Made by a program: the position numbers and the translations under genes
Notes under the pieces: model-generated
Told to the model about the DNA's origin: nothing
Databases searched by the model: none
What the model saw: only the letters and a program-made list of their open reading frames with translations
Virus record (IMG/VR): IMGVR_UViG_3300044640_001495
Location: 1 to 64,000 of that record
DNA length: 64,000 nucleotides
Reading direction: 5' to 3' (one strand)
Part shown: positions 24,412 through 50,753 of the stretch, in pieces
How positions within the stretch are numbered: position 1 is the first letter of the stretch
How the letters are laid out: each line of letters starts with the position of its first letter

Positions 24412-24656
24412 AAAAAATAACACTAGACCAATTGGTAGAAATTGCCGCAGAAGTAGAAGCTGGCGATCCCGCAGATTGGGGTAAACTTGCTGTTGGGCAA
24501 GAACAGGCATTTAGAATGATTGGCACAAGTATACTTGACATGTTTGACAAAGAAGTGTATACTGATGATGACAAACTGATAATGTTGGCAACTATTACTA
24601 AACTAACAGTTGAAAACATGTTGCTTAATCTAAAGATTATGGATAAAAGTTCATAA
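24408..24656 (+). CDS. hypothetical protein
   Basis: 82 aa ORF with ATGA overlap. Confidence 0.6.
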
Positions 24657-24703
24657 ATAACTCACACAGACAGCATAAATTTACAAACAAGGAAAATAGT
24701 AAA

Positions 24704-24907
24704 ATGGTAACAGGAAAAGTAAAATGGTTTAACGACGCCAAAGGTTTTGGATTCATTACTCCGGACGATGGTGGCGCAGACTTATTTGCTCACTTTTCAC
24801 AGATTAATTCGAGTGGCTTCAAGAGCCTACAAGAAGGACAAAGTGTAAGGTTTGAAGTGACTCAGGGTCAAAAAGGCGAGCAGGCTAGTAATATTCAAGC
24901 TGCCTAA
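24704..24907 (+). CDS. cspA: cold-shock protein
   Basis: [17 protein letters not shown] (RNP1) and LFAHFS (RNP2). Confidence 0.95.
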
Positions 24908-40233: not shown

Positions 40234-40304
40234 GTAAACTAGTATTTTAATATAATCGGTTTTTGCTCTAAATATACATAACAAGTATAACCGGGAGCGA
40301 ATCG

Positions 40305-40787
40305 ATGGTTAAGTTTATAATAGCCACCATATTAATGGCTACAGCATCAGTAGTCAATGGTGCAGAATTACAACACAATTTTAATAGTCCATCCTTTTCA
40401 GGGATTGGATATAGTTCTCACGTTCTAACACTCTATCAATTAGAGACACAGGCCAGAGACAAAAATAAAGCAGCAGCTGATGCTCTTAAAGCAAAGGCAG
40501 AGAGTGATGCATTAAACACTCCGCAGGCTAAGTTTCAAGCAAACTTAGAAAGTCGTATCTATTCACAGTTGGCCAAGCAGATTACAGATAGTTTGTTTGG
40601 TGTTAACGGTGTTCCAGTGTGTACTGCTAACAGTGCAGGTAATTGCGGACAAATGGAAGTTGCCGGTAATAACATCACCTGGAAAGTAGAAGGTACATTT
40701 ATTATTGTTAGAATTGAAAATGTATTAGATCCAAGACAATTTACAGAAATGAAGGTGCCAAGTGGCACATTTGGATTTGGAGGATAA
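40305..40787 (+). CDS. csgF: curli assembly protein CsgF-like
   Basis: Signal peptide then AELQHNFNSPSFSG.G...Q motif; LESRIYSQLAKQI..SLFG. Confidence 0.8.
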   Translation: MVKFIIATILMATASVVNGAELQHNFNSPSFSGIGYSSHVLTLYQLETQARDKNKAAADALKAKAESDALNTPQAKFQANLESRIYSQLAKQITDSLFGVNGVPVCTANSAGNCGQMEVAGNNITWKVEGTFIIVRIENVLDPRQFTEMKVPSGTFGFGG

Positions 40788-40790
40788 TAC

Positions 40791-42026
40791 ATGAAACAAA
40801 CACTATTATCCCTGGCCGTTGTAGCAGTATTGAGTGGGTGCGCATCAAGTTCGGCTATCAAAGAAAAAATAACTGGAAACCAGTTTGACGAACCGAAAGT
40901 CGAGTCTAGTAAATTTCTAAAGAAAGACTCTAATAAATTACAACCACCAGAAGGCGGACCGTTAACAGTGGCAGTGTATGGATTTAGAGATCTAACAGGG
41001 CAACGTAAAAGCCAGCCACTGATTGCGTCATTAAGTTCAGCTGTTACACAAGGTGCTGAAAACTATCTAATCAAGGCCCTACAGGATGTAGGTGATCAAC
41101 GCTGGTTCACAGTACTAGAACGTGTTGGCCTAGAGAACTTGATCAAAGAACGTCAAATGATTCGTCAAATGCGTGAGCAATACCAAGGCCGTGATGCCAA
41201 GATGTTGCCCCCAATGATGTTTGCCGGGATCATCATGGAAGGTGGCATTGTTGGCTACGATAGCAATACACTAACAGGCGGTAGTGGAGTAAGACTGTTT
41301 GGTATTGGGGCAAGCACACAATACCAATCAGACACTGTGACAGTTACCTTAAGAACAGTGAGCGTGTCTACAGGCGAAATTTTAACAACTGTGACAGTAA
41401 CTAAAACAGTGTTAAGTTATATGGACAAAGTGACATTATTGCGATTTGTTGGAGATGGCACAACTTTAGGTGCAAATGCAAATGCATTAGAGGGTGAGAT
41501 CGGCGGCAGCATAAATGAAAGTATCAACAAGGCAATCGACGTAGCTGTACAGGCAGCAGTGATTCAAACTATTAATGAAGGTGCTCGTAAAGGACACTGG
41601 GCATTTAAAAGCAATAAAGTAAGTTCTCCGGTTGCCGTTATTCCGGCGATACCTGCACCAGTAGTAATACCTGCACCAGTAGTAATACCTGCACCAGTAG
41701 TAATATCAGTACCAGTAGTAGAGGAGAAGAAAGATGTCGTGGTTCAATCACAAGCCAAACCCGAAACCAAAACCGAAGCCGTATCCAGTGCCCCCGCAGA
41801 AATAAAGAAAGAAGTTGTACCGGTTGAAAAACTTTCAGGTGAGATGATTTTAAAGGAAGCTTCTTACATTTATAAAGAGCCCGACCTAACAAGTCAAAAA
41901 ACTTGGCAGTTTAAGAAAGGTGCTTTAGTTACAATTATAGGACAAGAGGGTGATTGGGTAGCAGTCAGTGACTCACAAAAACGAAAAGGATTTGTTAATA
42001 AGGATGTACTGGTTAACAAACCTTAA
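40791..42026 (+). CDS. csgG: curli secretion channel CsgG-like lipoprotein with C-terminal Pro/Val linker and SH3-like domain
   Basis: LSG-C lipobox; VAVYGFRDLTGQRK, SSAVTQGA, LERVGLENLIKERQMIR, EGGIVGYD and VTVTLRTVSV.TGEI. Confidence 0.9.
   Translation: MKQTLLSLAVVAVLSGCASSSAIKEKITGNQFDEPKVESSKFLKKDSNKLQPPEGGPLTVAVYGFRDLTGQRKSQPLIASLSSAVTQGAENYLIKALQDVGDQRWFTVLERVGLENLIKERQMIRQMREQYQGRDAKMLPPMMFAGIIMEGGIVGYDSNTLTGGSGVRLFGIGASTQYQSDTVTVTLRTVSVSTGEILTTVTVTKTVLSYMDKVTLLRFVGDGTTLGANANALEGEIGGSINESINKAIDVAVQAAVIQTINEGARKGHWAFKSNKVSSPVAVIPAIPAPVVIPAPVVIPAPVVISVPVVEEKKDVVVQSQAKPETKTEAVSSAPAEIKKEVVPVEKLSGEMILKEASYIYKEPDLTSQKTWQFKKGALVTIIGQEGDWVAVSDSQKRKGFVNKDVLVNKP
41649..41720 (+). repeat. 18-bp coding tandem repeat (IPAPVV x3 plus one degenerate unit)
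   Basis: atacctgcaccagtagta x3, then atatcagtaccagtagta. Confidence 0.9.
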
Positions 42027-42029
42027 TGG

Positions 42030-42077
42030 TGTTGGAATTTTAACATGTTGAAATTTTAACATGTTGAAATTTTAACA
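42030..42077 (+). repeat. three tandem 16-bp quasi-palindromes TGTT-N8-AACA
   Basis: tgttggaattttaaca, tgttgaaattttaaca, tgttgaaattttaaca in the csgG-curlin intergenic region. Confidence 0.92.
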
Positions 42078-42220
42078 GCGGCATTTAATTTCTAGAGTAC
42101 AGAGATTAAATAAAATTACAAGAAGTAAGTCTACGGAGAGGAGTAGATTAGAGAAGTGGTATAATTATAGGTCAATGACCAGGAACTTGTCAGCAAACAA
42201 TAAACTGACATTTTAAAAAA

Positions 42221-43036
42221 ATGAAACAAACAATGACAGGCGGTTGTGGGTTGTCGAGAAAATTACTCACAGTGATGCTGATGAGCTTTGCCACCATAAG
42301 TGGTGCTCAGACAGCAACAGGTCCTAACAAGGTTTATATCGAACAAGTGGGTAGTAGCAATACTATCACAATTGAACAAGTTGGCGGGACTAACAATGTT
42401 GGCGGCGTTACTACAACTGTAGCAACGACAGTAGCAGGAACAGGTATTACTACACTGACTCCAGACGCACCGAGTGCTACTAACTATGGAACTATTACCG
42501 GAAGCACAAACATAGTTGACATTACACAAACAGGAAATGCTAACAGTAGCCAATACAATATTCGTGGAAGTAATAACAGCTACACTACTAATATGTTAGG
42601 CAATGGTAATCAAACTAGATTAACTATTGGCAATACCAACAACGCTACAAACAGCCAAAACGTTATTACAGAACAAATTATCGGTAATAACAATATGATT
42701 CTACAAGATCTAGTTGGTAGCAATATTACTACTAACACAGTTTTGGATGGAGATAATAACCAAGTTACTAGTAGTTTGTTAAGCAGCAGAGGTAGTGTAT
42801 CAAATGTAGCTAATGGAAACGCTAACGTGTTCAACATCCAGCAATTAGATGCAGCGGGTGCTAACGGACATGTTCTTGCTATGATGACCACAGGCGACTA
42901 CAACAGCATCACCACACAGCAACAAGGCACCAACGATACCACAGTTAATATACAAACACAGGGTAGCAACAACACTATCACAGTTCGTACAAGTAGTTCA
43001 GCTATTGTATCTCCAGCCACAGCGATTGCGAGATAA
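42221..43036 (+). CDS. curlin-repeat protein (CsgA/CsgB-like)
   Basis: Signal peptide; repeated x-Q-x-G-x-x-N units (IEQVGSSN, ITQTGNAN, QQQGTND, QTQGSNN); Asn/Thr/Gly-rich. Confidence 0.8.
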   Translation: MKQTMTGGCGLSRKLLTVMLMSFATISGAQTATGPNKVYIEQVGSSNTITIEQVGGTNNVGGVTTTVATTVAGTGITTLTPDAPSATNYGTITGSTNIVDITQTGNANSSQYNIRGSNNSYTTNMLGNGNQTRLTIGNTNNATNSQNVITEQIIGNNNMILQDLVGSNITTNTVLDGDNNQVTSSLLSSRGSVSNVANGNANVFNIQQLDAAGANGHVLAMMTTGDYNSITTQQQGTNDTTVNIQTQGSNNTITVRTSSSAIVSPATAIAR

Positions 43037-43038
43037 TT

Positions 43039-44133
43039 ATGCGTGTCTTGTTGTTAGCCCTACTGCTAACAGTGGCCAGCCCTTCTTGGGCTGGCATTGG
43101 CACGGTTTCAGAAAACAAAGGCACAGCCTGTGAAGTTGAACGCAATAAGAAAAAGATGTCAGGAGTTAAGGGTGCTGAAATTGAAAGCATGGACACTTAT
43201 ACAACCGGTGCTTGTGTAAGTAATATAACATTCAAAGATGATACCAAAGTCAAAGTTACAGAAAACAGCAGATTGCTTATCGACGATTTTGTTTTCGATC
43301 CTAAGAAATCAGATGCAGGCAAGCTCGCGCTCAAAGTTGGTATGGGCACTGTCCGATACGCTAGCGGACAAATTGCTAAAAATAATCCGCAACAGGTAAA
43401 CATCAAAACTCCAACAGCTACAGTAGCAGTGCGTGGCACTGATTTCACTATGACTGTGGATGAAACTGGGCAAAGTCTTATCATGCTGGTTCCTAGTTGT
43501 AAAGACGAAAAAGACGTTAAACAATTTGAACTAGATGAACAACGATGTAAGGTTGGCAGTATCACAGTGACTACAGGCATTGGATCAGTGACCTTAGACA
43601 AGGCATTCGAAGCTACCTATGTCACCAGTGCTTCAATGATGCCAACTTCCCCAGTTATTGTCAATACCGTTGAAGGCAAGATAGGTAATAACTTAATCAT
43701 TGTTAAGCCTCAAGAAGTCTTGCAGGCAATTAAAGATGCCGGCAGATCAAAACGTGATACTGAATTAGAAGAACTCGAGGCAGACGCCCAACGACAAATA
43801 GCTATGCGTGTTGAAAAAGCCAACGAAAAAAGCGACCCTGTACTATTGCCAGATACATTTTCTGATGGTAAGAAAGGATGTAATCCAAGTACTACTGTTT
43901 GCGTGGCATGGGAAAAGAACGACTCTCCTGATATACAAAGTAAAGGCAAAGGTACAGCCTATAGAAGTAATACAGATCATTATGCTGAAGTTAAAACCAC
44001 AGGCTATGATTCAAACACATTTGTGTCTATAAGCCACAATGATCAATATGCGTTTACGTTTGTTGGTAGCGGAGATCCAGGCGGTAATGTAGTAAACATT
44101 GTACAAAAGACTGGAGTGTTAAGACGTCCATGA
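43039..44133 (+). CDS. FecR-domain exported protein
   Basis: Signal peptide; ITFKDDTKVKVTENSRLLIDDF, GTVRYASG and IKTPTATVAVRGTDF. Confidence 0.85.
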   Translation: MRVLLLALLLTVASPSWAGIGTVSENKGTACEVERNKKKMSGVKGAEIESMDTYTTGACVSNITFKDDTKVKVTENSRLLIDDFVFDPKKSDAGKLALKVGMGTVRYASGQIAKNNPQQVNIKTPTATVAVRGTDFTMTVDETGQSLIMLVPSCKDEKDVKQFELDEQRCKVGSITVTTGIGSVTLDKAFEATYVTSASMMPTSPVIVNTVEGKIGNNLIIVKPQEVLQAIKDAGRSKRDTELEELEADAQRQIAMRVEKANEKSDPVLLPDTFSDGKKGCNPSTTVCVAWEKNDSPDIQSKGKGTAYRSNTDHYAEVKTTGYDSNTFVSISHNDQYAFTFVGSGDPGGNVVNIVQKTGVLRRP

Positions 44134-45785
44134 AACGAATAATTTTTTTATTGTTATTATTCTGCTCTAACGCATTTGGCGCCCTAACAGATATAAAGTT
44201 TGGACGATACCAAATTGCAGACAGCCAATGGAATGTCAGTGCCTGTTTGAATACAACAACCTGCCAAATTTACAGTAAGCAACCTGGTACTATGTACAAA
44301 ATACCATGGTTCAATGGAACTTGGAGTTGGCAGTCAGGACAGTATGTACAATTTGGGTTGACAGGGAATGCCAGCTATCCCTACGAAGGCAAAGTTTACA
44401 ACAGCAACGGCACACTAGCTGGTACTATAGGCACAGGTAAAATTGTCAACATGGGTCCAGATTATTTCTTCTTTGTAGGCAATGACAACAATACAGGACA
44501 GCTATTCAGTGGCAGCTCGGGTATGTCAACTACCAGCGGAGTATCGTGGACTGGCGCACTTAATCCGACTATACAACAGGCCGATACATACGCTAACGCC
44601 ACGTATTCTACAGTACCGTTAAGTTCAGGGCAGACTGCTACATCTACTCCTAGTAATGCGGCGCCGCCGCCACCTGCGCCTACCGCAATTTACAATAACA
44701 GTTCTGGTGTGTATGTTACCAGAGCAATACCAACTAGCAATAATAGTCCAAGCAATGAAGGTCCTACTAATGCGTTTGATAACAATCCCTATACCAAGTA
44801 CTTAAACTTCGATAAACAAAATGCTGGAGTTACTATCCAATTAAATGCTGGGCGAGTTGTTACTAGTTTTAAATTAACTACAGCTAATGATGCTGTAGAG
44901 CGAGATCCAACAAGTTATAAACTCTACGGATCAAATGACGGATCAACATGGACATTAATTCAACAAGGCGCACTATCTTTGTCCGATAATAGATTTAGTG
45001 TTAGTAGCGATATCGCAGTAACTAACTCTACGGCCTATGTTTATTATTTTATGATATTCCCTTCTATTAAAAACAATGCTGGTAATAGCGTACAAATTGC
45101 AGAGATTACCTATTTCTATGATGCTAATAGTACAACCACAAGTACAGCAACTAGCAATACTATTGTTGATCCAACAACCGCCGCCGCAAATACGTTATGT
45201 TGCGGTGGATCAGCAGCCGCATTTAATGCTAACACAACAAACACGGCTAAAGTTTTAACATTCGTTAATAGAACAACTGCCGATAGCCAAGTACACATAG
45301 AACAGATCGGCACACAAAACGTAGTTGAAGTAAATCAAAGCGGGACTAAAAATAATTATGTCGAATATTACGGCAATGGTCTAAGCAATGATATTAATAT
45401 CGCACAAACAGGAAATGCTACAACACAGGCAAATTATGTTGACTTGAGAGTTGTGGGTAATTTTAACTTAGTAGATCTACAACAGACCAGTACTGGTGGT
45501 ACTAAAGGAATATTTGCTGATGTCAGCGGCAATAACAATAGTTTGCTGGTACAACAAAAAGACGGCGGCAGTCACTATGCTGAAATCACACTAAGTGGCG
45601 GTAATAAGAATGTCGACGTACTGCAACAAGGCAGCGCCAGTCATATGGCCAAAGTTAATCTAAGCGGTACACCTACTGATCTAAGTCTAACACAAAGTGG
45701 CAGTACTCAAAACTACTATTCAATCACTCACAACTGCACCACTGTAGGCGGTTGTGCTAAAATTACTGTGACACAGGGACAATAA
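44130..45785 (+). CDS. exported protein with discoidin/F5-8-like domain and C-terminal curlin repeats
   Basis: EGPTNAFDNNPYTKYL...RDPTSYKLYGSNDGSTW discoidin-like segment; C-terminal IEQIGTQN, NQSGTKNN, AQTGNAT and LQQGSASH repeats. Confidence 0.72.
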   Translation: MKRIIFLLLLFCSNAFGALTDIKFGRYQIADSQWNVSACLNTTTCQIYSKQPGTMYKIPWFNGTWSWQSGQYVQFGLTGNASYPYEGKVYNSNGTLAGTIGTGKIVNMGPDYFFFVGNDNNTGQLFSGSSGMSTTSGVSWTGALNPTIQQADTYANATYSTVPLSSGQTATSTPSNAAPPPPAPTAIYNNSSGVYVTRAIPTSNNSPSNEGPTNAFDNNPYTKYLNFDKQNAGVTIQLNAGRVVTSFKLTTANDAVERDPTSYKLYGSNDGSTWTLIQQGALSLSDNRFSVSSDIAVTNSTAYVYYFMIFPSIKNNAGNSVQIAEITYFYDANSTTTSTATSNTIVDPTTAAANTLCCGGSAAAFNANTTNTAKVLTFVNRTTADSQVHIEQIGTQNVVEVNQSGTKNNYVEYYGNGLSNDINIAQTGNATTQANYVDLRVVGNFNLVDLQQTSTGGTKGIFADVSGNNNSLLVQQKDGGSHYAEITLSGGNKNVDVLQQGSASHMAKVNLSGTPTDLSLTQSGSTQNYYSITHNCTTVGGCAKITVTQGQ

Positions 45786-45802
45786 AACAGCATAAATATT
45801 TC

Positions 45803-47845
45803 ATGCTGAAAAAAATCCTAACTAGTCCTTGGACTGCCCTATTAACATTGGCACTTATTGTAAGTATAAGAATCGCCGATCCTGTCTTTGTAGAAAGTGT
45901 AAGACTACGCTACTTTGACACACTGATTACTAATAAAACTCCAACTGCCAATAACATCTATACGGTAAACATAGATGAAGCAGCATTGGACAAATATGGC
46001 CAGTGGCCTTTACCAAGGGCAGAGTATGCAAAAATTATTAAAGATCTTTATGATCGTGGTGCTGGCCTTGTTGTGCTCAATGTTATCATGGCTGAGCCTG
46101 ATCGCACTGGTGGCGATGCTGTTCTCGCAACGGCCCTAAAACAATATCCAGTTGTAATGGGCAGCGTACCATCACAAAAAACTAAGAACTCTCCTCGCAA
46201 TCCAGGTAGTGCTGTACTAGGTCCAGAGTGGCAGGATCAAATTGTACAATACCCGGGACTTATTGCCAATGTACCTCAGTTAGAAAATGCAGCAGCAGGC
46301 ATTGGTATCGTTAGTACACTGCCAGAAGTAGACGGTGTTAATCGACGACTGCCCCTAGTTGTATCCGTTGATGGTAAATTATATCCCAGTATGTCTATGG
46401 AAGCACTTAGAGTCGCAGCTGGTGATTCAACCTTCCAAGTCAAGCTCAATGAAAATGGTGTTGAGAAAATGCGCATACCCAAGTTTGGTCCTATTACAAC
46501 AGATGCGTTAGGTCGTGTATGGATCGATTGGAGTCAAGAAAACCAACAGGCGAGTCTTTTGGACTTGCCCAAAAACTTTAATGGTGCTATAGTTATAGTA
46601 GGTCCAACAGCCGCAGGCATTGCTAATCCTTTGCCTACAGCTAAAGGTGCAGTGTGGCCGCAGGATGTACAAGCGGCAGCAATGGCAACTATGATCAACG
46701 GAGTGGTAATTCAACGTCCCGACTATGCCGACGGAGTTGAAATCCTAGCATTACTAGTATTCGGCATATTGTTAATTTTCTTATCGAGGTGGACTTATGT
46801 TGGAATTGGTTCTGCTGTGGTTATTGTTGGTGCCGTCGTTCCTGGTACTATGTACGCTTTCAGTAATTGGCTCATCCTATCAGATGCGACTGCAATCACG
46901 TTTGGGCTTGTTATCGTTGCTCTTCATACTTATGGCGTTAAATTTGTAAGCGAGTTCTTACAGAAGCAGGCCATAAAGAAACAGTTTGCGGGTTATTGCT
47001 CTAAAGAAGTTGTAGAGCTACTACAAAAAGATCCAGACTTAATCAAGCGTGGTGTACGCAAAGATGTATCAGTTATGTTCAGTGACCTGCGTGGCTTTAC
47101 TCCTATTGGTGAACACTATGGTGATGATGTAGGCGGACTAGGCAAGTATATGAACGGCTACATGGATGCTATCAGTCGTCCTATCATGAACAACAACGGC
47201 ATGATATTAAAGTATGTAGGTGATGCGAGTATGCACATACATGGTGCTCCTATCGAAGACACCAATCATGCTAGAACTATTGTTGCTGTTGGCCTAGAGA
47301 TGCTGGATGCTGTTGACGAATACACAAAACTGATGGAAGCACAAGGATTACCACCTGCCGCAATGGGTTGGGGTTGCAATACTGGTATTGGCTTTATTGG
47401 CGAGATGGGATCAACTGACAGACACGGTTATGACATCTTAGGTGATATGGTGTCAACCGCGGCACGACTAGAAGCACGTTGTAAGGCCTATGGTGTACTA
47501 TGTATTATTGGTGCTGAAACATACAATCGTACCAAAGACGACTTCTTTTATCTAATGATAGATAACTTACAGCCTAAAGGAAAAACTGTGGCAGACTTGA
47601 TCTATACAGTATTACGTACTAAGGGTGCAGACTACACTAGAGATAAGATAGCACACGAAGTGATGCATGACTTGTACCGACAGAAAAAGTTTGACGAAGC
47701 TGCCGCTATGTGTGCAAAGCTAAAGGGCAACTTTGGTGGACAAATGGACAAGTACTACAAAATCTGGATCGAGCGTTGCGACTTTATGAAACTGCAAGAT
47801 CTAGGCGACAACTGGAACGGCGAGTTTGTTGCTCACGAGAAGTAA
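45803..47845 (+). CDS. CHASE2 sensor plus class III adenylate/guanylate cyclase
   Basis: VNIDEAALDKYGQWP.PR and EVDGVNRRLPL CHASE2 motifs; three TM helices; VMFSDLRGFT, LKYVGD and GDMVSTAARLE. Confidence 0.92.
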   Translation: MLKKILTSPWTALLTLALIVSIRIADPVFVESVRLRYFDTLITNKTPTANNIYTVNIDEAALDKYGQWPLPRAEYAKIIKDLYDRGAGLVVLNVIMAEPDRTGGDAVLATALKQYPVVMGSVPSQKTKNSPRNPGSAVLGPEWQDQIVQYPGLIANVPQLENAAAGIGIVSTLPEVDGVNRRLPLVVSVDGKLYPSMSMEALRVAAGDSTFQVKLNENGVEKMRIPKFGPITTDALGRVWIDWSQENQQASLLDLPKNFNGAIVIVGPTAAGIANPLPTAKGAVWPQDVQAAAMATMINGVVIQRPDYADGVEILALLVFGILLIFLSRWTYVGIGSAVVIVGAVVPGTMYAFSNWLILSDATAITFGLVIVALHTYGVKFVSEFLQKQAIKKQFAGYCSKEVVELLQKDPDLIKRGVRKDVSVMFSDLRGFTPIGEHYGDDVGGLGKYMNGYMDAISRPIMNNNGMILKYVGDASMHIHGAPIEDTNHARTIVAVGLEMLDAVDEYTKLMEAQGLPPAAMGWGCNTGIGFIGEMGSTDRHGYDILGDMVSTAARLEARCKAYGVLCIIGAETYNRTKDDFFYLMIDNLQPKGKTVADLIYTVLRTKGADYTRDKIAHEVMHDLYRQKKFDEAAAMCAKLKGNFGGQMDKYYKIWIERCDFMKLQDLGDNWNGEFVAHEK

Positions 47846-47847
47846 TC

Positions 47848-48330
47848 TTATCTAACTATCATAGCAAAAGTAAACATCACCGTAGGGACCGCTATTGCCA
47901 TAAAACTTGTACCTATAAGTACTCTGTCTATCATGTCAGACTGTGCTTGTATTTTGGCATTTTTTATGTCTGCTTCTAGTTTAGCACGTTCTTTATACAT
48001 ACGCACACGCTCGGCCATCATCTCGTCCCAAACATCTTTGTTACCTGACCATATCAACATTTCTTTCAATTCTTTTTCAGTGTCACGCAAGGCCTTGCTC
48101 TGCATGGCAATCTGAACTGACATGGCTCTAATCTGACCGTCTGTGAGAATCTTTTTGCTAGTTTGTGCCTCTACATTAGCACTGTGAATCTTATCGCTGT
48201 TTTCAAAGAACTTGGCAAACTGTCCATAGAGACTGTTGACATCTTTGCCCAGAGCAATGGCCTTTTTAATATAGCTCACTGACTGTTGTGCGGCCGTGAA
48301 GGCAATACCAAGTGTGATAGGATCAATCAT
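47848..48330 (-). CDS. hypothetical protein with C-terminal TM helix
   Basis: MIDPIT..IAF..A....IKKAI..GKDV N-terminus, coiled coil, hydrophobic C-terminus. Confidence 0.65.
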   Translation of the reverse strand: MIDPITLGIAFTAAQQSVSYIKKAIALGKDVNSLYGQFAKFFENSDKIHSANVEAQTSKKILTDGQIRAMSVQIAMQSKALRDTEKELKEMLIWSGNKDVWDEMMAERVRMYKERAKLEADIKNAKIQAQSDMIDRVLIGTSFMAIAVPTVMFTFAMIVR

Positions 48331-48485
48331 GTTTTCTTGGGTGCCTTATCTTTAGGTGGAGGTTTAGACCATTCCAGGCATACCACTTTGCGATTGTATA
48401 CATCGCCAGTCCATGTCCATTTGACACACCGAGGCTCGTTTGATAACATGCCTGCTAGTAATAGCGAGGCAATTGCATTTACCAT
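48327..48485 (-). CDS. small exported Cys/Trp protein (52 aa; not in ORF track)
   Basis: GGAG RBS; MVNAIASLLLAGMLSNEPRCVKWTWTGDVYNRKVVCLEW...; ATGA overlap. Confidence 0.6.
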   Translation of the reverse strand: MVNAIASLLLAGMLSNEPRCVKWTWTGDVYNRKVVCLEWSKPPPKDKAPKKT

Positions 48486-48503
48486 AATCGCTCCTCCTAC
48501 AAA

Positions 48504-48836
48504 TTAACTTTCGCCTGCTGCGGCTGACTTATCGTCCTCAGATTTCTTTTTAGATTGTGTAATCTTGTTAATTTCTGTTTCTGCTTCTACACGTTCAAAC
48601 TCAATTGTCTTGCCTCGTAGGTGTAATACTGTATTGACCTTTTGATTTAGTCGAATCAAATCGTTGTCCAACATACGTATACGATCGATTAGGGCGATAA
48701 GAACGGTGTTAGCTTCGCTGATAACGGGCTTGACTTCTTTCGTGGCCCATTCCCAAACATACTTGATGATAAAGCCCATTCCCACTGCCATGACAATTGG
48801 AAAACCATATTTGTTTACAAGTTCAACTATATCCAT
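48504..48836 (-). CDS. N-terminal TM plus coiled-coil protein (YvrJ/holin-like)
   Basis: KYGFPIVMAVGMGFII, then LIALIDRIRMLDNDLIRL. Confidence 0.65.
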   Translation of the reverse strand: MDIVELVNKYGFPIVMAVGMGFIIKYVWEWATKEVKPVISEANTVLIALIDRIRMLDNDLIRLNQKVNTVLHLRGKTIEFERVEAETEINKITQSKKKSEDDKSAAAGES

Positions 48837-48977
48837 TTATTTTACCTCCTTCCAGATTCCCCAAGGGTCCCAGATTTTCTTTTCTTTTTCTGCGGGCTCG
48901 TAATAATACCAAACTGCTACTGATGCTAGAACTAAAACCTCTAGCATCCAAAACACTAGAAATGCTTCAAACAACAT
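48837..48977 (-). CDS. small single-TM protein (46 aa; not in ORF track)
   Basis: AGGAG RBS; MLFEAFLVFWMLEVLVLASVAVWYYY... Confidence 0.55.
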   Translation of the reverse strand: MLFEAFLVFWMLEVLVLASVAVWYYYEPAEKEKKIWDPWGIWKEVK

Positions 48978-48997
48978 AGTTCGCTCCTATTTGTTGA

Positions 48998-49144
48998 TTA
49001 AACTGTTAACCCAAATATCAATCCTATTACGAATCCTACTAGTCCTGCCTTAACAAGATCAATATCATGCCACAACGGTTGATTTTTTAAATATTCTCTA
49101 GTATGTTCAGGCAAACTGTCATACCAGTTAGTCCACTTGTCCAT
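48998..49144 (-). CDS. small C-terminal TM protein (48 aa; not in ORF track)
   Basis: MDKWTNWYDSLPEHTREYLKNQPLWHD...GFVIGLIFG. Confidence 0.55.
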   Translation of the reverse strand: MDKWTNWYDSLPEHTREYLKNQPLWHDIDLVKAGLVGFVIGLIFGLTV

Positions 49145-49322
49145 TTTCACCGTCCTTTAAAAATTTTACCAACGGGTCTACTTTTTTAAGATAGCATCTT
49201 CCGTCAATGTTAACTAGCTGGAAATAGTCTCCGCCTTTCCATCCTAGCTTATCTACGTTAAGTTCGTTATCCAATATTATTCCATTTGGACTTAGATCCC
49301 ACGAATAGTCAAAATGCAACAT
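49128..49322 (-). CDS. small hypothetical protein (64 aa)
   Basis: MLHFDYSWDL...; start moved to the ATG at 49322. Confidence 0.55.
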   Translation of the reverse strand: MLHFDYSWDLSPNGIILDNELNVDKLGWKGGDYFQLVNIDGRCYLKKVDPLVKFLKDGENGQVD

Positions 49323-49552
49323 CAATCTCTCCTCGCCCACTCTGCTGGCCATTTTGGGTTTGTAGCCTTTTGCTCGCGCACCATTCGAAACCATTCTTTC
49401 CTTACTGCTAGATCATGTTTCATACGATCTAATTTAGAGTCTGAATTATCGCTATAAAATATATAATAGAATGCTATGCCAAATCCAAAACTTAATAAAA
49501 AATATGCGATCAGTTTTAGATCTAGAACGAAATTAATCTCTACGAGCATCAT
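49322..49552 (-). CDS. small membrane protein
   Basis: One hydrophobic helix; start uncertain. Confidence 0.5.
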   Translation of the reverse strand: MMLVEINFVLDLKLIAYFLLSFGFGIAFYYIFYSDNSDSKLDRMKHDLAVRKEWFRMVREQKATNPKWPAEWARRD

Positions 49553-49814
49553 TCTTTCCATCGGCTCGGGCAATACGATCTGCATCAGGCCGTAGACCTA
49601 GTGCATTGGATACAATAGTATCAATACGTATTACATCGTGATTCATGGTTTTGACACGATTGTCTAGAGCAATAATAATGCCCTTCATGCCGTTGATAGA
49701 GCCAAGTACGCCCTGTAGCAATAGCTTAATGGTTAAGTATACAAAATACCCACCTGCTAGTGCAGCGGCTACTGGCATGCCCAGATCGCCTATAATCTTG
49801 AAAATGTCGCCCAT
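49533..49814 (-). CDS. N-terminal TM plus coiled-coil protein (paralog of 48504..48836)
   Basis: DLGMPVAAALAGGYFVY, then IIALDNRVKTMNHDVIRI. Confidence 0.65.
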   Translation of the reverse strand: MGDIFKIIGDLGMPVAAALAGGYFVYLTIKLLLQGVLGSINGMKGIIIALDNRVKTMNHDVIRIDTIVSNALGLRPDADRIARADGKNDARRD

Positions 49815-49848
49815 CGGTTCGCTCCCGGTTATATGAGTATTTAACCGA

Positions 49849-49877
49849 TTGACAGGGTTTTAAACTGATGCTATAAT
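49849..49877 (+). promoter_or_regulatory. sigma70-type promoter
   Basis: TTGACA-N17-TATAAT. Confidence 0.88.
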
Positions 49878-49901: not shown

Positions 49902-50753
49902 ATGAAAATTAAATTGGTTTCAGACCTGCACTTAGAGTTCTCGGACATTATGATCCCTAACGATGCTGATTACGATCTACTAATTTTGAGCGGCGATATT
50001 ATGGTTGCCCAAGATCTCCACGACCATCAGGACGAAAATGTTAGAACTGCGGCCATGCTTGAAATGTTAGGCAGCAGACAGCTTAAGGCTCAGCGATTCC
50101 GTGATTTCTTAAAGCGTTGTAGTTTTCAATTTCCGCATGTGATTTATGTTGCAGGTAATCACGAGTTCTACCACGGTAAATTCTTTGCCAGCATTGATCA
50201 TCTGCGTGAAGAATGTGCCAAGTATCCCAATATCTATTTCTTGGAAAATGACACCAAGGTAATCAACGACATTGTGTTTATGGGTGCAACACTTTGGACT
50301 GACTGCAACAAGCATGACCCATTTACACTTCATGCGCTTGCGGACATGATGAACGATTTTAGAATTATTCGACATGATCAATCCGGCTACCGAGCTCTCA
50401 AGCCTGCTGACATTGCAGATCGTCATCGCAAAACACTGCAATATTTTAAGACTGTAATGGACGGCTATCCTCAAGAGCAAAAGTTTGTTGTGGTAGGACA
50501 TCACACTCCTAGCCATATGAGTTGTCATCCGCAGTATGCACATGACTACATCATGAACGGTGGCTATCACAGCGACCTAAGTGATTTTATTCTTGATCAT
50601 CCACAGATTAAACTTTGGACTCACGGACATACTCATCATCCGTTTGATTATGTGTTAGGCAGTACTCGTGTAGTTTGTAATCCTAGGGGGTACGAAAGCG
50701 ATGGCTATACTGAAGATACTGGCTGGAATCCCAACATTGTATTGGAAGTTTAA
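49902..50753 (+). CDS. calcineurin-like metallophosphoesterase
   Basis: SDLHLE, LSGD, AGNHE, VVVGHH and HGHTH motifs. Confidence 0.88.
   Translation: MKIKLVSDLHLEFSDIMIPNDADYDLLILSGDIMVAQDLHDHQDENVRTAAMLEMLGSRQLKAQRFRDFLKRCSFQFPHVIYVAGNHEFYHGKFFASIDHLREECAKYPNIYFLENDTKVINDIVFMGATLWTDCNKHDPFTLHALADMMNDFRIIRHDQSGYRALKPADIADRHRKTLQYFKTVMDGYPQEQKFVVVGHHTPSHMSCHPQYAHDYIMNGGYHSDLSDFILDHPQIKLWTHGHTHHPFDYVLGSTRVVCNPRGYESDGYTEDTGWNPNIVLEV

What the first reader, a model, noticed from the sequence alone, without database searches (positions are those of the whole stretch)
40286..49833. A 22/23-nt identical translation-initiation leader marks both outer ends of the convergent curli/cyclase and small-membrane-protein operons
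Seen: tataaccgggagcgaatcgATGG (40286-40308, + strand, csgF) and tataaccgggagcgaaccgATGG (49833-49811, - strand, first gene of the opposing cluster), each preceded by a TAAATA box. A partial copy, aggagcgaactATG, precedes 48977. The two proteins are unrelated, so identity confined to the leader suggests a shared regulator. Inference: the seven or eight small TM genes at 47848-49814 belong to the same system, and a protein or sRNA recognises the GGGAGCGAA leader.
Basis: partly seen in the sequence, partly recalled or inferred. Interest (0 to 1): 0.62.

Follow-up and report, generated by a model that had tools for sequence, protein, structure and literature searches.

The report
Late-gene leader matched by early antisense hairpins
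Two unrelated late operons of a 353-kb jumbo phage (a curli-secretion operon and a small-membrane-protein operon) start with the same short mRNA leader, and that leader is exactly complementary to a conserved hairpin loop at the 3' ends of early phage transcripts, which suggests, but does not prove, antisense-RNA control of their translation.

Summary
Window 40286-40308 (+) and 49833-49811 (-) match at 22 of 23 bases. Both copies end on the start codon, of csgF and of a conserved 93-aa membrane protein (p93). Each lies 23-30 nt downstream of a TAAATA box.

TAAATA is this phage's late-promoter box: it also precedes the tail sheath, baseplate and tail-fibre genes.

It is a special ribosome-binding site at about 17 gene starts, mostly early genes.

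The longer core CCGGGAGCGAAYCG occurs four times in the genome. Two copies are the leaders. The other two, outside the window at about 316.4 and 323.3 kb, are in reverse complement on the transcribed strand of the early region. Each sits between a stop codon and an intrinsic terminator, in the loop of a hairpin.

In related phages the loop (core UCGCUCC) stays constant while the stems vary with compensatory changes. Hairpins, motif-bearing leaders and GGAGCGAA ribosome-binding sites occur together in five genomes. Three complete genomes have none of them.

Best reading (about 45%): early-made 3' hairpin RNAs pair with the Shine-Dalgarno region of these late messages. No expression data could be obtained. 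The claim that the curli and small-membrane genes form one system is not supported.

The parts
40269..40274 (+). TAAATA box, late-promoter-like, upstream of csgF
   Evidence: In this genome TAAATA lies 12-70 nt before a Shine-Dalgarno sequence plus ATG at 40 places, including tail sheath, baseplate wedge and hub, and tail fibres. It is conserved upstream of csgF homologs.
40286..40308 (+). Leader copy 1. It covers most of the predicted 5'UTR, the Shine-Dalgarno GGAG (40294-40297), the core CCGGGAGCGAATCG (40291-40304), and ATGG.
   Evidence: This is the best predicted target of the anti-leader 15-mer among 396 translation-initiation regions (-29.7 kcal/mol; mean -8.0, sd 3.4).
40305..47845 (+). 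Late curli-like operon: csgF (40305-40787), csgG with a C-terminal SH3 domain (40791-42026), a weak curlin-repeat protein (42221-43036), a FecR-domain protein (43039-44133), an F5/8-type-C protein (44130-45785) and a CHASE2-nucleotidyl cyclase (45803-47845)
   Evidence: Pfam. csgG homologs were found in 107 IMG/VR stretches.
47848..49814 (-). Array of eight small ORFs, most with a hydrophobic segment. It is headed by p93 (49814-49533). The 110-aa ORF 48836-48504 is a paralog of p93.
   Evidence: p93 and the 110-aa ORF both hit phrog_18771 (unknown function) at 1e-30, and the 110-aa ORF has a weak N-terminal hit to a holin family. p93 homologs were found in at least 580 IMG/VR stretches.
49811..49833 (-). 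Leader copy 2 (core CCGGGAGCGAACCG, 49828-49815) ending in the ATGG of p93
   Evidence: This is the second-best predicted target (-25.0 kcal/mol).
49838..49843 (-). TAAATA box upstream of p93
   Evidence: It is conserved in most p93 homolog upstream regions.
48980..48987 (-).
   Evidence: It is identical in genome G001. It shares only the general site, not the flanks.
48488..48494 (-). GGAGCGA ribosome-binding site of the 52-aa ORF 48485-48327
49849..49877 (+). Consensus sigma-70 promoter (TTGACA-17-TATAAT) for the divergent metallophosphatase gene 49902-50753. It shares the intergenic region with the p93 late promoter.

Best explanation
The repeat is the 5' untranslated leader of two late transcription units.

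Shown: each copy lies just downstream of a TAAATA box, the box that also precedes this phage's virion structural genes, and carries the start codon. Inferred, by analogy with the T4 late promoter TATAAATA: transcription starts about 6-7 nt after the box, so the shared 19 nt make up nearly the whole 5'UTR.

Shown: the leader holds a specialised Shine-Dalgarno region, GGAGCGAA. Only its GGAG can pair with 16S rRNA.

Shown: the 9-nt stretch GGAGCGAAU is the exact complement of a conserved hairpin loop, AUUCGCUCC. On the csgF leader the match extends to 14-15 nt through the closing CCG/CGG pairs of the stem. The loop is displayed on the transcribed strand of the sigma-70-driven early region, between a stop codon and an intrinsic terminator. 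This genome has two such hairpins, at G000 316406-316393 and 323321-323308, both outside the window.

Proposed mechanism (inferred): 3' fragments of early transcripts, made of the hairpin plus the terminator, act as antisense RNAs. Their loops pair with the Shine-Dalgarno region of messages carrying GGAGCGA, most strongly csgF and p93. This blocks or delays ribosome loading on pore-forming and membrane proteins until late in infection. The same loops can make weaker 8-bp contacts with the GGAGCGAA sites of about 7 early genes, so the regulon may be wider than these two operons.
For: 1. The core 14-mer occurs four times in 353 kb: two leaders and two reverse-complement copies in the early region. 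About 0.003 are expected by chance.
2. The early region (309-328.5 kb) has more than 20 perfect TTGACA-17-TATAAT promoters, all on the minus strand. Both antisense copies lie 3-23 nt after a stop codon and 15-30 nt before a strong hairpin followed by a U-run on that strand.
3. RNA folding puts AUUCGCUCC in a 9-nt loop. The site at 316.4 kb folds with z = -6.0.
4. An unbiased sample was taken through homologs of the two upstream early ORFs. 25 distinct 3'UTRs of one family and 31 distinct hairpin contexts of the other carry the element and fold with the loop exposed. The core TCGCT-C is invariant. The closing stem varies as CCG/CGG, CUG/CAG, UCG/CGA and CCAGG/CCUGG. Outer stems are more stable with their own partner than with swapped partners (-13.3 against -9.0 and -12.9 against -9.6 kcal/mol).
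5. Type-B hairpins are more stable on the early-gene strand in 12 of 14 cases.
6. Co-occurrence: hairpins are present in G000, G002, G003, G013 and G016. All five have motif-bearing late leaders. G000, G002, G003 and G016, where this was counted, also have many GGAGCGAA early ribosome-binding sites. The complete genomes G004, G005 and G011 have no leader motif and no hairpin. G004, the one checked for ribosome-binding sites, has none of the GGAGCGAA type and no hairpin complementary to its own sites.
7. csgF and p93 are the two best predicted targets of 396 initiation regions. They are the only ones with a net gain in co-folding.
8. In relatives the leader motif precedes csgF, p93 and large signal-peptide proteins, always behind a TAAATA box.
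9. GGAGCGA precedes a start codon at 17 of 26 occurrences, although CGA adds nothing to 16S pairing.
Against: Whether a stable hairpin RNA exists, when it is made and whether it affects translation are all untested.

The co-occurrence rests on about 16 related genomes and is confounded by shared descent. Several of those contigs are only 20-80% complete.

The extended match beyond the loop is not universal. In G016 the p93 leader shares only GGAGCGAAUC with the loops.

Loop variants such as ACUCGCUCC are not accompanied by a matching change in a nearby ribosome-binding site (L472).

In the tandem loci, the upstream copy is more stable on the opposite strand. In one relative (L243) a TAAATA box sits directly upstream of the sense copy, so the strand that matters is not settled for all types.

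Distant homologs carry an ordinary UUCG-type hairpin at the same place. The hairpin may therefore have started as a plain 3' stabiliser.

It is not obvious that early RNAs persist long enough to act on late messages.
Confidence: 0.45

Rival explanations
1. Shared late promoter plus a favoured strong initiation region, and nothing more. The two operons simply use the phage's late promoter and its preferred GGAGCGAA ribosome-binding site. The extra identical bases (TATAA, CCG, CG) reflect common descent or gene conversion of a short leader. The early-region hairpins do something unrelated, such as stabilising 3' ends, helping termination or controlling early genes only.
For: GGAGCGA(A) is used at 17 gene starts of several classes. 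TAAATA is general to late genes. The TATAA part is not conserved in relatives. Distant homologs have an ordinary UUCG-type hairpin at the same 3'UTR position.
Against: This does not explain why a 14-mer with about 0.003 expected chance occurrences is found four times, twice as the exact complement in a hairpin loop. It does not explain why the loop stays constant while the stems change. It does not explain why CCGGGAGCGAA persists before csgF homologs of only 35-55% identity. It does not explain why hairpins and GGAGCGAA sites appear and disappear together.
Confidence: 0.25
2. A protein, not an RNA, reads the motif. One candidate is an RNA-binding translational regulator that recognises GGAGCGAA, possibly as a GGA-containing loop of a mini-hairpin CCG[GGAGCGAAU]CGG, in the manner of CsrA/RsmA or T4 RegA. 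The other is a DNA-binding protein that recognises the duplex in either orientation.
For: Several leaders can form the 3-bp mini-hairpin with GGA in the loop. One variant keeps it through a double change, ACG...CGU (L120). In L261 and L253 the motif sits at the 5' end of the UTR, and a second GGAGCGAA further downstream is placed to serve as the Shine-Dalgarno. A duplex-DNA site would explain the occurrence in both orientations.
Against: Many leaders lack the 3' half of the mini-hairpin, including both copies in this window (CGA, not CGG). On the transcribed early strand the loop reads CUCC and has no GGA. A DNA operator gives no reason for stem covariation around a constant loop. No candidate regulator gene was identified.
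Confidence: 0.18
3. The two inverted 23-mers are the ends of a mobile or invertible 9.5-kb cassette, or recombination scars like the repeated regulatory cassettes of T4-type phages.
For: The copies are inverted and bracket accessory-looking genes. csgG is absent within 10 kb of p93 in 22 relatives that have at least 9.5 kb of sequence on that side, and lies in other arrangements in a few more.
Against: No transposase or recombinase lies between the copies. There is no target-site duplication. Each copy is in exact register with a start codon and supplies its Shine-Dalgarno. p93 is a core gene that carries the leader even where csgG is absent.
Confidence: 0.05

Closest known systems
3'UTR-derived and hairpin-loop antisense sRNAs that occlude Shine-Dalgarno regions. 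Examples from my own knowledge: enterobacterial CpxQ, DapZ and SroC; the C-rich UCCC loops of Staphylococcus aureus Rsa RNAs and RNAIII; the c4 RNA of phages P1 and P7, which pairs with the icd/ant ribosome-binding site.
   Same: A C-rich single-stranded loop complementary to the Shine-Dalgarno region. It is placed just upstream of an intrinsic terminator at the end of a coding transcript. The seed is conserved in a variable scaffold.
   Different: Here it is only predicted. The source is the early genes of a lytic jumbo phage and the targets are its own late messages. The target site is a specialised extended Shine-Dalgarno (GGAGCGAA) shared by a whole class of phage genes. There are several copies per genome, sometimes in tandem or inside the terminator loop itself.
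T4 late promoter (TATAAATA), and T4's device of making late genes (e, soc, 49) translatable only from late transcripts, because early read-through transcripts sequester the ribosome-binding site in cis (own knowledge; T4 post-transcriptional control is reviewed in PMC3014915)
   Same: A TAAATA box a short distance upstream of late genes. Control of late-gene translation is by pairing at the ribosome-binding site.
   Different: The pairing partner proposed here acts in trans and is encoded about 70 kb away in the early region. Dependence on gp55, gp33 and gp45 homologs was not tested.
Phage-encoded curli (type VIII secretion) CsgF/CsgG clusters of pelagimyophages (PMC7029224)
   Same: csgF and csgG are adjacent in a large myovirus-type genome, next to hypothetical curlin-like proteins. 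Their function in the phage is unknown.
   Different: This is a 353-kb jumbo phage. CsgG has a C-terminal SH3 domain. The operon goes on into FecR-domain, F5/8-type-C and CHASE2-cyclase genes. The leader/hairpin feature has not been described for those phages.
sRNAs and early antisense transcripts of Pseudomonas phage PAK_P3 (PMC4933390)
   Same: A virulent phage with abundant small RNAs, and antisense RNA proposed to hold down late structural genes early in infection.
   Different: The PAK_P3 sRNAs are made late, lie in intergenic regions and carry a tRNA T-loop-like motif. Its antisense transcripts are long cis-antisense RNAs, not trans-acting loops.
Promoter-early stem-loop (PeSL) cassettes of T4-type phages (own knowledge: Arbiol et al. 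2010)
   Same: Repeated hairpin-plus-early-promoter modules lie between small early genes. Here the order is hairpin, terminator, a conserved GACCGGCACTCC stretch, then TTGACA.
   Different: PeSLs are thought to be recombination substrates. No conserved loop complementary to late-gene leaders is known for them.

Membership tests
Bacterial translation-initiation region (Shine-Dalgarno plus start codon) | A purine-rich GGAG-type element 5-9 nt upstream of the start codon of a real gene | tested here: met
   GGAG lies 7 nt before the ATG at both sites. The start codons are fixed by conserved N-termini in more than 80 homologs each.
T4-type late promoter | A TATAAATA-like box upstream of late (virion) genes | tested here: met
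   TAAATA precedes the tail sheath, baseplate wedge and hub, tail-fibre and virion-protein genes, as well as csgF and p93 and their homologs.
T4-type late promoter | Dependence on a phage late sigma factor (gp55), gp33 and the sliding clamp; a mapped transcription start | not tested
   I did not search for gp55 or gp33 homologs, and no transcript data were available.
Trans-acting antisense or 3'UTR-derived sRNA | Seed complementary to the target's translation-initiation region | tested here: met
   The match is 14 of 14 to csgF and 13 of 14 to p93. These are the top two of 396 initiation regions.
Trans-acting antisense or 3'UTR-derived sRNA | Encoded at the 3' end of a transcription unit, directly upstream of an intrinsic terminator | tested here: met
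   Both are predicted only: sigma-70 promoters and terminators lie on the same strand, and the hairpin lies between the stop codon and the terminator. The same layout is seen in relatives.
Trans-acting antisense or 3'UTR-derived sRNA | Seed conserved while the scaffold varies and keeps its structure | tested here: met
   The loop core is invariant in 33 distinct hairpins. The closing pairs are 97-100% paired, with CG to UA, AU and GC changes. Outer stems covary.
Trans-acting antisense or 3'UTR-derived sRNA | Accumulates as a stable RNA and changes translation or stability of the target | not testable with these tools
The host is uncultured or unknown.
Transposon or invertible segment bounded by terminal inverted repeats | A transposase or recombinase inside, and a target-site duplication outside | tested here: not met
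   No such Pfam or PHROG hit was found in 40305-49814. The flanking bases do not repeat.
CsrA/RsmA-type binding site | GGA in the loop of a short hairpin that overlaps the Shine-Dalgarno, usually in several copies per target | tested here: inconclusive
   A CCG[GGAGCGAAU]CGG mini-hairpin is possible in some relatives. It is incomplete in both window copies (CGA). Each leader has only a single site.
Curli / type VIII secretion operon | The CsgG channel and CsgF | tested here: met
   CsgG 1.2e-46 and CsgF 5e-08, both above the Pfam cut-offs.
Curli / type VIII secretion operon | CsgA/CsgB curlin-repeat subunits and CsgE | tested here: inconclusive
   The only hit is a single Curlin_rpt match of 19.9 bits, below the 20.7 cut-off. 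No CsgE was found.
Rfam RNA families | A match to any curated covariance model | tested here: not met
   Only tRNAs matched in the 19.5-kb early region at E up to 1.

The most novel reading that the evidence does not exclude
A clade of freshwater-type jumbo phages runs a private translation code. A subset of its genes uses an extended Shine-Dalgarno (GGAGCGAA). Hairpin loops (UUCGCUCC) released from the 3' ends of early transcripts act as a phage-made anti-Shine-Dalgarno that times or throttles that whole gene class, including the late curli-pore and holin-like membrane operons. This would be a multi-copy, terminator-embedded antisense regulator of a kind not described for lytic phages.
Probability: 0.3. 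Interest if true: 0.8.

Novelty: new variant of a known kind. Interest (0 to 1): 0.62.

Why it matters
Few regulatory RNAs are known in virulent phages, and none to my knowledge in uncultured jumbo phages. If the pairing is real, it is a compact and testable example of temporal control by RNA. Early transcripts would carry, in their terminator region, a loop that recognises a specialised ribosome-binding site on later messages for potentially lethal membrane proteins: the CsgG pore and the holin-like p93 family. It would also explain why a non-canonical extension of the Shine-Dalgarno (CGAA) is kept across many genes and genomes. It gives a handle on how and when phage curli genes, whose role is unknown, are expressed. 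If the pairing is not real, the finding reduces to a shared late promoter and a favoured ribosome-binding site, which is ordinary.

Tried and rejected
- Megablast of 39.5-50.5 kb against isolated phage genomes gave no match.
- Rfam on the early region found only tRNAs.
- RNAalifold on MAFFT alignments recovered only the 3-bp closing helix and the terminator. The outer stems differ in length and register. I replaced this with per-sequence constrained folds and a partner-swap control.
- A genome-wide search for enriched hairpin-loop 6-mers was too noisy to use.
- A search of G004 for hairpins complementary to its own ribosome-binding site (AAGGAGCC) found none on the early strand.
- Chance is rejected. 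A genome-wide promoter-type repeat is rejected because there are only two copies of the 16-mer.
- Homologous N-termini are rejected, because the proteins diverge straight after the first codon.
- A cis hairpin sequestering the ribosome-binding site is not supported: the leader folds are no better than shuffles (z = -0.3 and 0.1).
- Pairing of the CGAA extension with 16S rRNA is rejected from the known anti-Shine-Dalgarno sequence (own knowledge).

Full report
**What the window is.** The window is the first 64 kb of a 353,123-bp IMG/VR virus record (98% complete by CheckV, GC about 41%), that is, a jumbo phage. It has no close relative among isolated phages. It has many relatives among uncultured viral contigs.

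**The observation.** Window 40286-40308 (+) and 49833-49811 (-) match at 22 of 23 bases, and both end in ATGG. The first ATG starts csgF (Pfam CsgF). The second starts a 93-aa ORF with an N-terminal hydrophobic segment, called p93 here.
- No shuffle of the window gives a match.
- The genome holds only these two copies of the 16-mer, allowing up to 2 mismatches.
- A few other 22-25-nt repeats exist in the genome.
- Identical register with two start codons 9.5 kb apart excludes chance.
- Both copies are preceded by TAAATA, which ends 11 nt and 4 nt upstream of them.

**Gene content.**
- Plus strand: csgF, csgG with a C-terminal SH3 domain, a weak curlin-repeat protein, a FecR-domain protein, an F5/8-type-C protein and a CHASE2-nucleotidyl cyclase.
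- Minus strand, converging on the cyclase gene with 2 nt between the stop codons: eight small ORFs.
- p93 and the 110-aa ORF 48836-48504 are paralogs in phrog_18771, a family of unknown function. The 110-aa ORF also has a faint N-terminal holin hit.
- Nothing in the interval resembles a recombinase.
- Phage curli csgF/csgG clusters are already known from pelagimyophages (PMC7029224), so the curli module itself is not new.

**The TAAATA box is the late promoter.**
- TAAATA is under-represented: 229 copies against roughly 420 expected from base composition.
- Forty copies lie 12-70 nt before a Shine-Dalgarno sequence plus ATG.
- The genes behind them include the tail sheath, baseplate wedge and hub, tail fibres and virion proteins.
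- The box is kept upstream of csgF and p93 homologs across the clade.
- By analogy with T4 (own knowledge), transcription should start about 6-7 nt after the box. That gives 5'UTRs of about 24 nt (csgF) and about 17 nt (p93), so the shared sequence is nearly the whole leader. Both operons therefore belong to the late class.

- GGAGCGA occurs 26 times in the genome, and 17 of these lie 5-8 nt before a start codon.
- Among about 106 GGAG-type ribosome-binding sites, CGA is tied for the commonest following triplet, while it is rare after GGAG elsewhere.
- Most of these sites belong to small genes at 309-328.5 kb. That region has more than 20 perfect TTGACA-17-TATAAT promoters, all on the minus strand, so it is an early region.
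- The partial copy before 48977 is one of these general sites.

**The new element.**
- The longer core CCGGGAGCGAATCG occurs exactly at 40291 and, outside the window, at G000 316393 and 323308. The one-base variant is at 49828. About 0.003 occurrences are expected by chance.
- The two outside copies are on the plus strand of the early region, so the minus-strand (early) transcripts carry the reverse complement.
- Each lies between the stop codon of a small early ORF and a strong intrinsic terminator, and is followed by the next sigma-70 promoter.
- Folding puts AUUCGCUCC in a 9-nt loop closed by CCG/CGG. Site A folds at -54 kcal/mol over 116 nt, z = -6.0.
- Rfam has no such family.

**Conservation in relatives.**
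- An exact scan of IMG/VR for the 14-mer gave many chance hits in unrelated GC-rich contigs. In relatives of this phage it gave two contexts: late leaders and early-region hairpin loops.
- Late leaders consist of a TAAATA box, the motif and ATG. They stand before csgF, p93 or large signal-peptide proteins. In two contigs the motif sits at the 5' end of the UTR, and a second GGAGCGAA lies further downstream.
- The hairpin loops fall into four scaffold types, including tandem copies and copies inside the terminator loop itself.
- To avoid selecting on the motif, I fetched homologs of the two upstream early ORFs and read their 3'UTRs. One family gave 25 distinct 3'UTRs and the other 31 distinct hairpin contexts that carry the element and fold with the loop exposed.
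- The loop core TCGCT-C is invariant. Changes sit at the 5' edge of the loop (A to G, U to C), plus one C to U that keeps pairing as a G-U wobble.
- The closing helix is 97-100% paired, with CG to UA, AU and GC exchanges.
- Outer stems differ completely between contigs, yet they are more stable with their own partner than with swapped ones.
- Homologs below about 75% identity lose the element and have a plain terminator or a UUCG-type hairpin.

**Co-occurrence.**
- Hairpins occur in G000, G002, G003, G013 and G016. All five also have motif-bearing late leaders. G000, G002, G003 and G016, where I counted, also have many GGAGCGAA early ribosome-binding sites.
- The complete genomes G004, G005 and G011 have no leader motif and no hairpin. 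I examined ribosome-binding sites only in G004: its early sites read AAGGAGCC or AAGGAGCT, and it has no hairpin complementary to them.
- Three incomplete contigs have leaders only.
- This fits a system in which the loop and the ribosome-binding site travel together. The genomes are related to each other, so it is not an independent statistical test.

**Target prediction.**
- Against 396 candidate initiation regions, the 15-nt anti-leader pairs best with csgF (-29.7 kcal/mol) and p93 (-25.0). The mean is -8.0 and the sd 3.4.
- Co-folding gives a net gain of 11-21 kcal/mol for these two. For an early GGAGCGAA leader or the sheath leader the gain is only about 0-6 kcal/mol. Kissing complexes are not modelled.
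- In G016 the p93 leader shares only GGAGCGAAUC with the loops, and one hairpin has a GCUA/UAGC closing stem. The conserved interaction surface is therefore the 9-10-nt loop, and the 14-15-nt match in this genome is a strong special case.

**Interpretation.** The best-supported reading is antisense control. Early transcripts end in a hairpin whose loop is an anti-Shine-Dalgarno for the GGAGCGA class of sites, with csgF and p93 as its strongest late targets.
- Shown: the sequences, their positions relative to predicted promoters, terminators and start codons, the conserved loop with covarying stems, the co-occurrence, and the late class of the two operons.
- Inferred: that the hairpins accumulate as RNA, that they pair with the leaders, and the direction of any effect.
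- The rivals are listed in the report sections: a plain shared late promoter and ribosome-binding site; a protein reader of RNA or DNA; and recombination or cassette ends.

**The one-system claim.** The claim that the curli and small-membrane genes form one system is not supported. p93 is far more widespread than csgG. The two are neighbours in only half of the loci, and in several different arrangements.

**Limits.**
- No transcript data could be obtained.
- Gene calls are ORF-based.
- The promoter and terminator assignments are consensus matches.
- The host is unknown.
- In the tandem loci, the upstream hairpin copy is more stable on the opposite strand. This remains unexplained.

Noticed in passing
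G000 309000-328500 (locus L163), outside the window: A dense early region. It has about 27 consensus sigma-70 promoters (TTGACA-17-TATAAT), all on the minus strand. Each is followed by an ACACAUACAC-type leader and often by a GGAGCGAA ribosome-binding site. There are few strong terminators, and two of them are preceded by the anti-leader hairpin. Three tRNA genes lie at L163 18485-18766.
   Followed up: partly
window 42030-42077: Three tandem copies of a 16-nt near-palindrome (TGTTGAAATTTTAACA) lie in the 194-nt gap between csgG and the curlin-like gene. They are followed by a TAAATA and a TATAAT. This looks like an operator array for an internal promoter.
   Followed up: no
window 41649-41705: A perfect 18-nt tandem repeat (three copies) inside csgG, in the linker between the CsgG domain and the C-terminal SH3 domain.
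   Followed up: no
window 40253-40260 and 49850-49843 (-): The 8-mer AATCGGTT lies just upstream of both TAAATA boxes. At the p93 site it abuts the -35 box of the divergent sigma-70 promoter. It can pair with AACCGAU in the p93 leader, but the fold is no better than shuffles. It may be chance (about 0.05).
   Followed up: partly
window 47845-47848: The cyclase gene and the last small minus-strand ORF converge with 2 nt between their stop codons and no terminator. Late transcripts from the two operons should therefore collide or overlap.
   Followed up: no
window 48504-48836 and 49533-49814 (-): p93 and the 110-aa ORF are paralogs (phrog_18771, unknown function). Their N-terminus is of the type xxIFKIIGDLGFPV. 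The 110-aa ORF has a faint holin-family hit. The family is present in at least 580 IMG/VR stretches, so it is a core gene of a large uncultured jumbo-phage clade.
   Followed up: partly
loci L243, L261, L253 (relatives): In L243 a TAAATA box sits 5 nt upstream of the sense copy inside a tandem hairpin locus, so a late transcript may run antisense to the hairpin RNA. In L261 and L253 the motif is at the 5' end of a late UTR, and a separate GGAGCGAA lies further downstream (directly before the start codon in L261).
   Followed up: no
loci L187, L208, L225, L251, L257 (relatives): In the tandem loci, the upstream hairpin copy (closing stem CG/CGG, flanks CCCAA...CAAG) folds more stably on the strand opposite to the early genes and has several G-U pairs there. 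This is the reverse of the other hairpin types.
   Followed up: no
loci L413, L419, L424, L433 (distant homologs of the 109-aa early ORF): At the place of the anti-leader hairpin these phages carry a short hairpin with a UUCG-type loop. The specialised loop may have evolved from an ordinary stabilising hairpin.
   Followed up: no
G000 about 223873 (-), outside the window: A similar string, GCCGGGAGCAUCGGG, precedes a 72-aa ORF and ranks third as a predicted target (-23.5 kcal/mol). It may lie inside a repetitive coding region.
   Followed up: no
window 24654-24760: A TAAATA-preceded 67-aa ORF starting [12 protein letters not shown] looks like a cold-shock (CspA-type) protein expressed with the late genes.
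   Followed up: no
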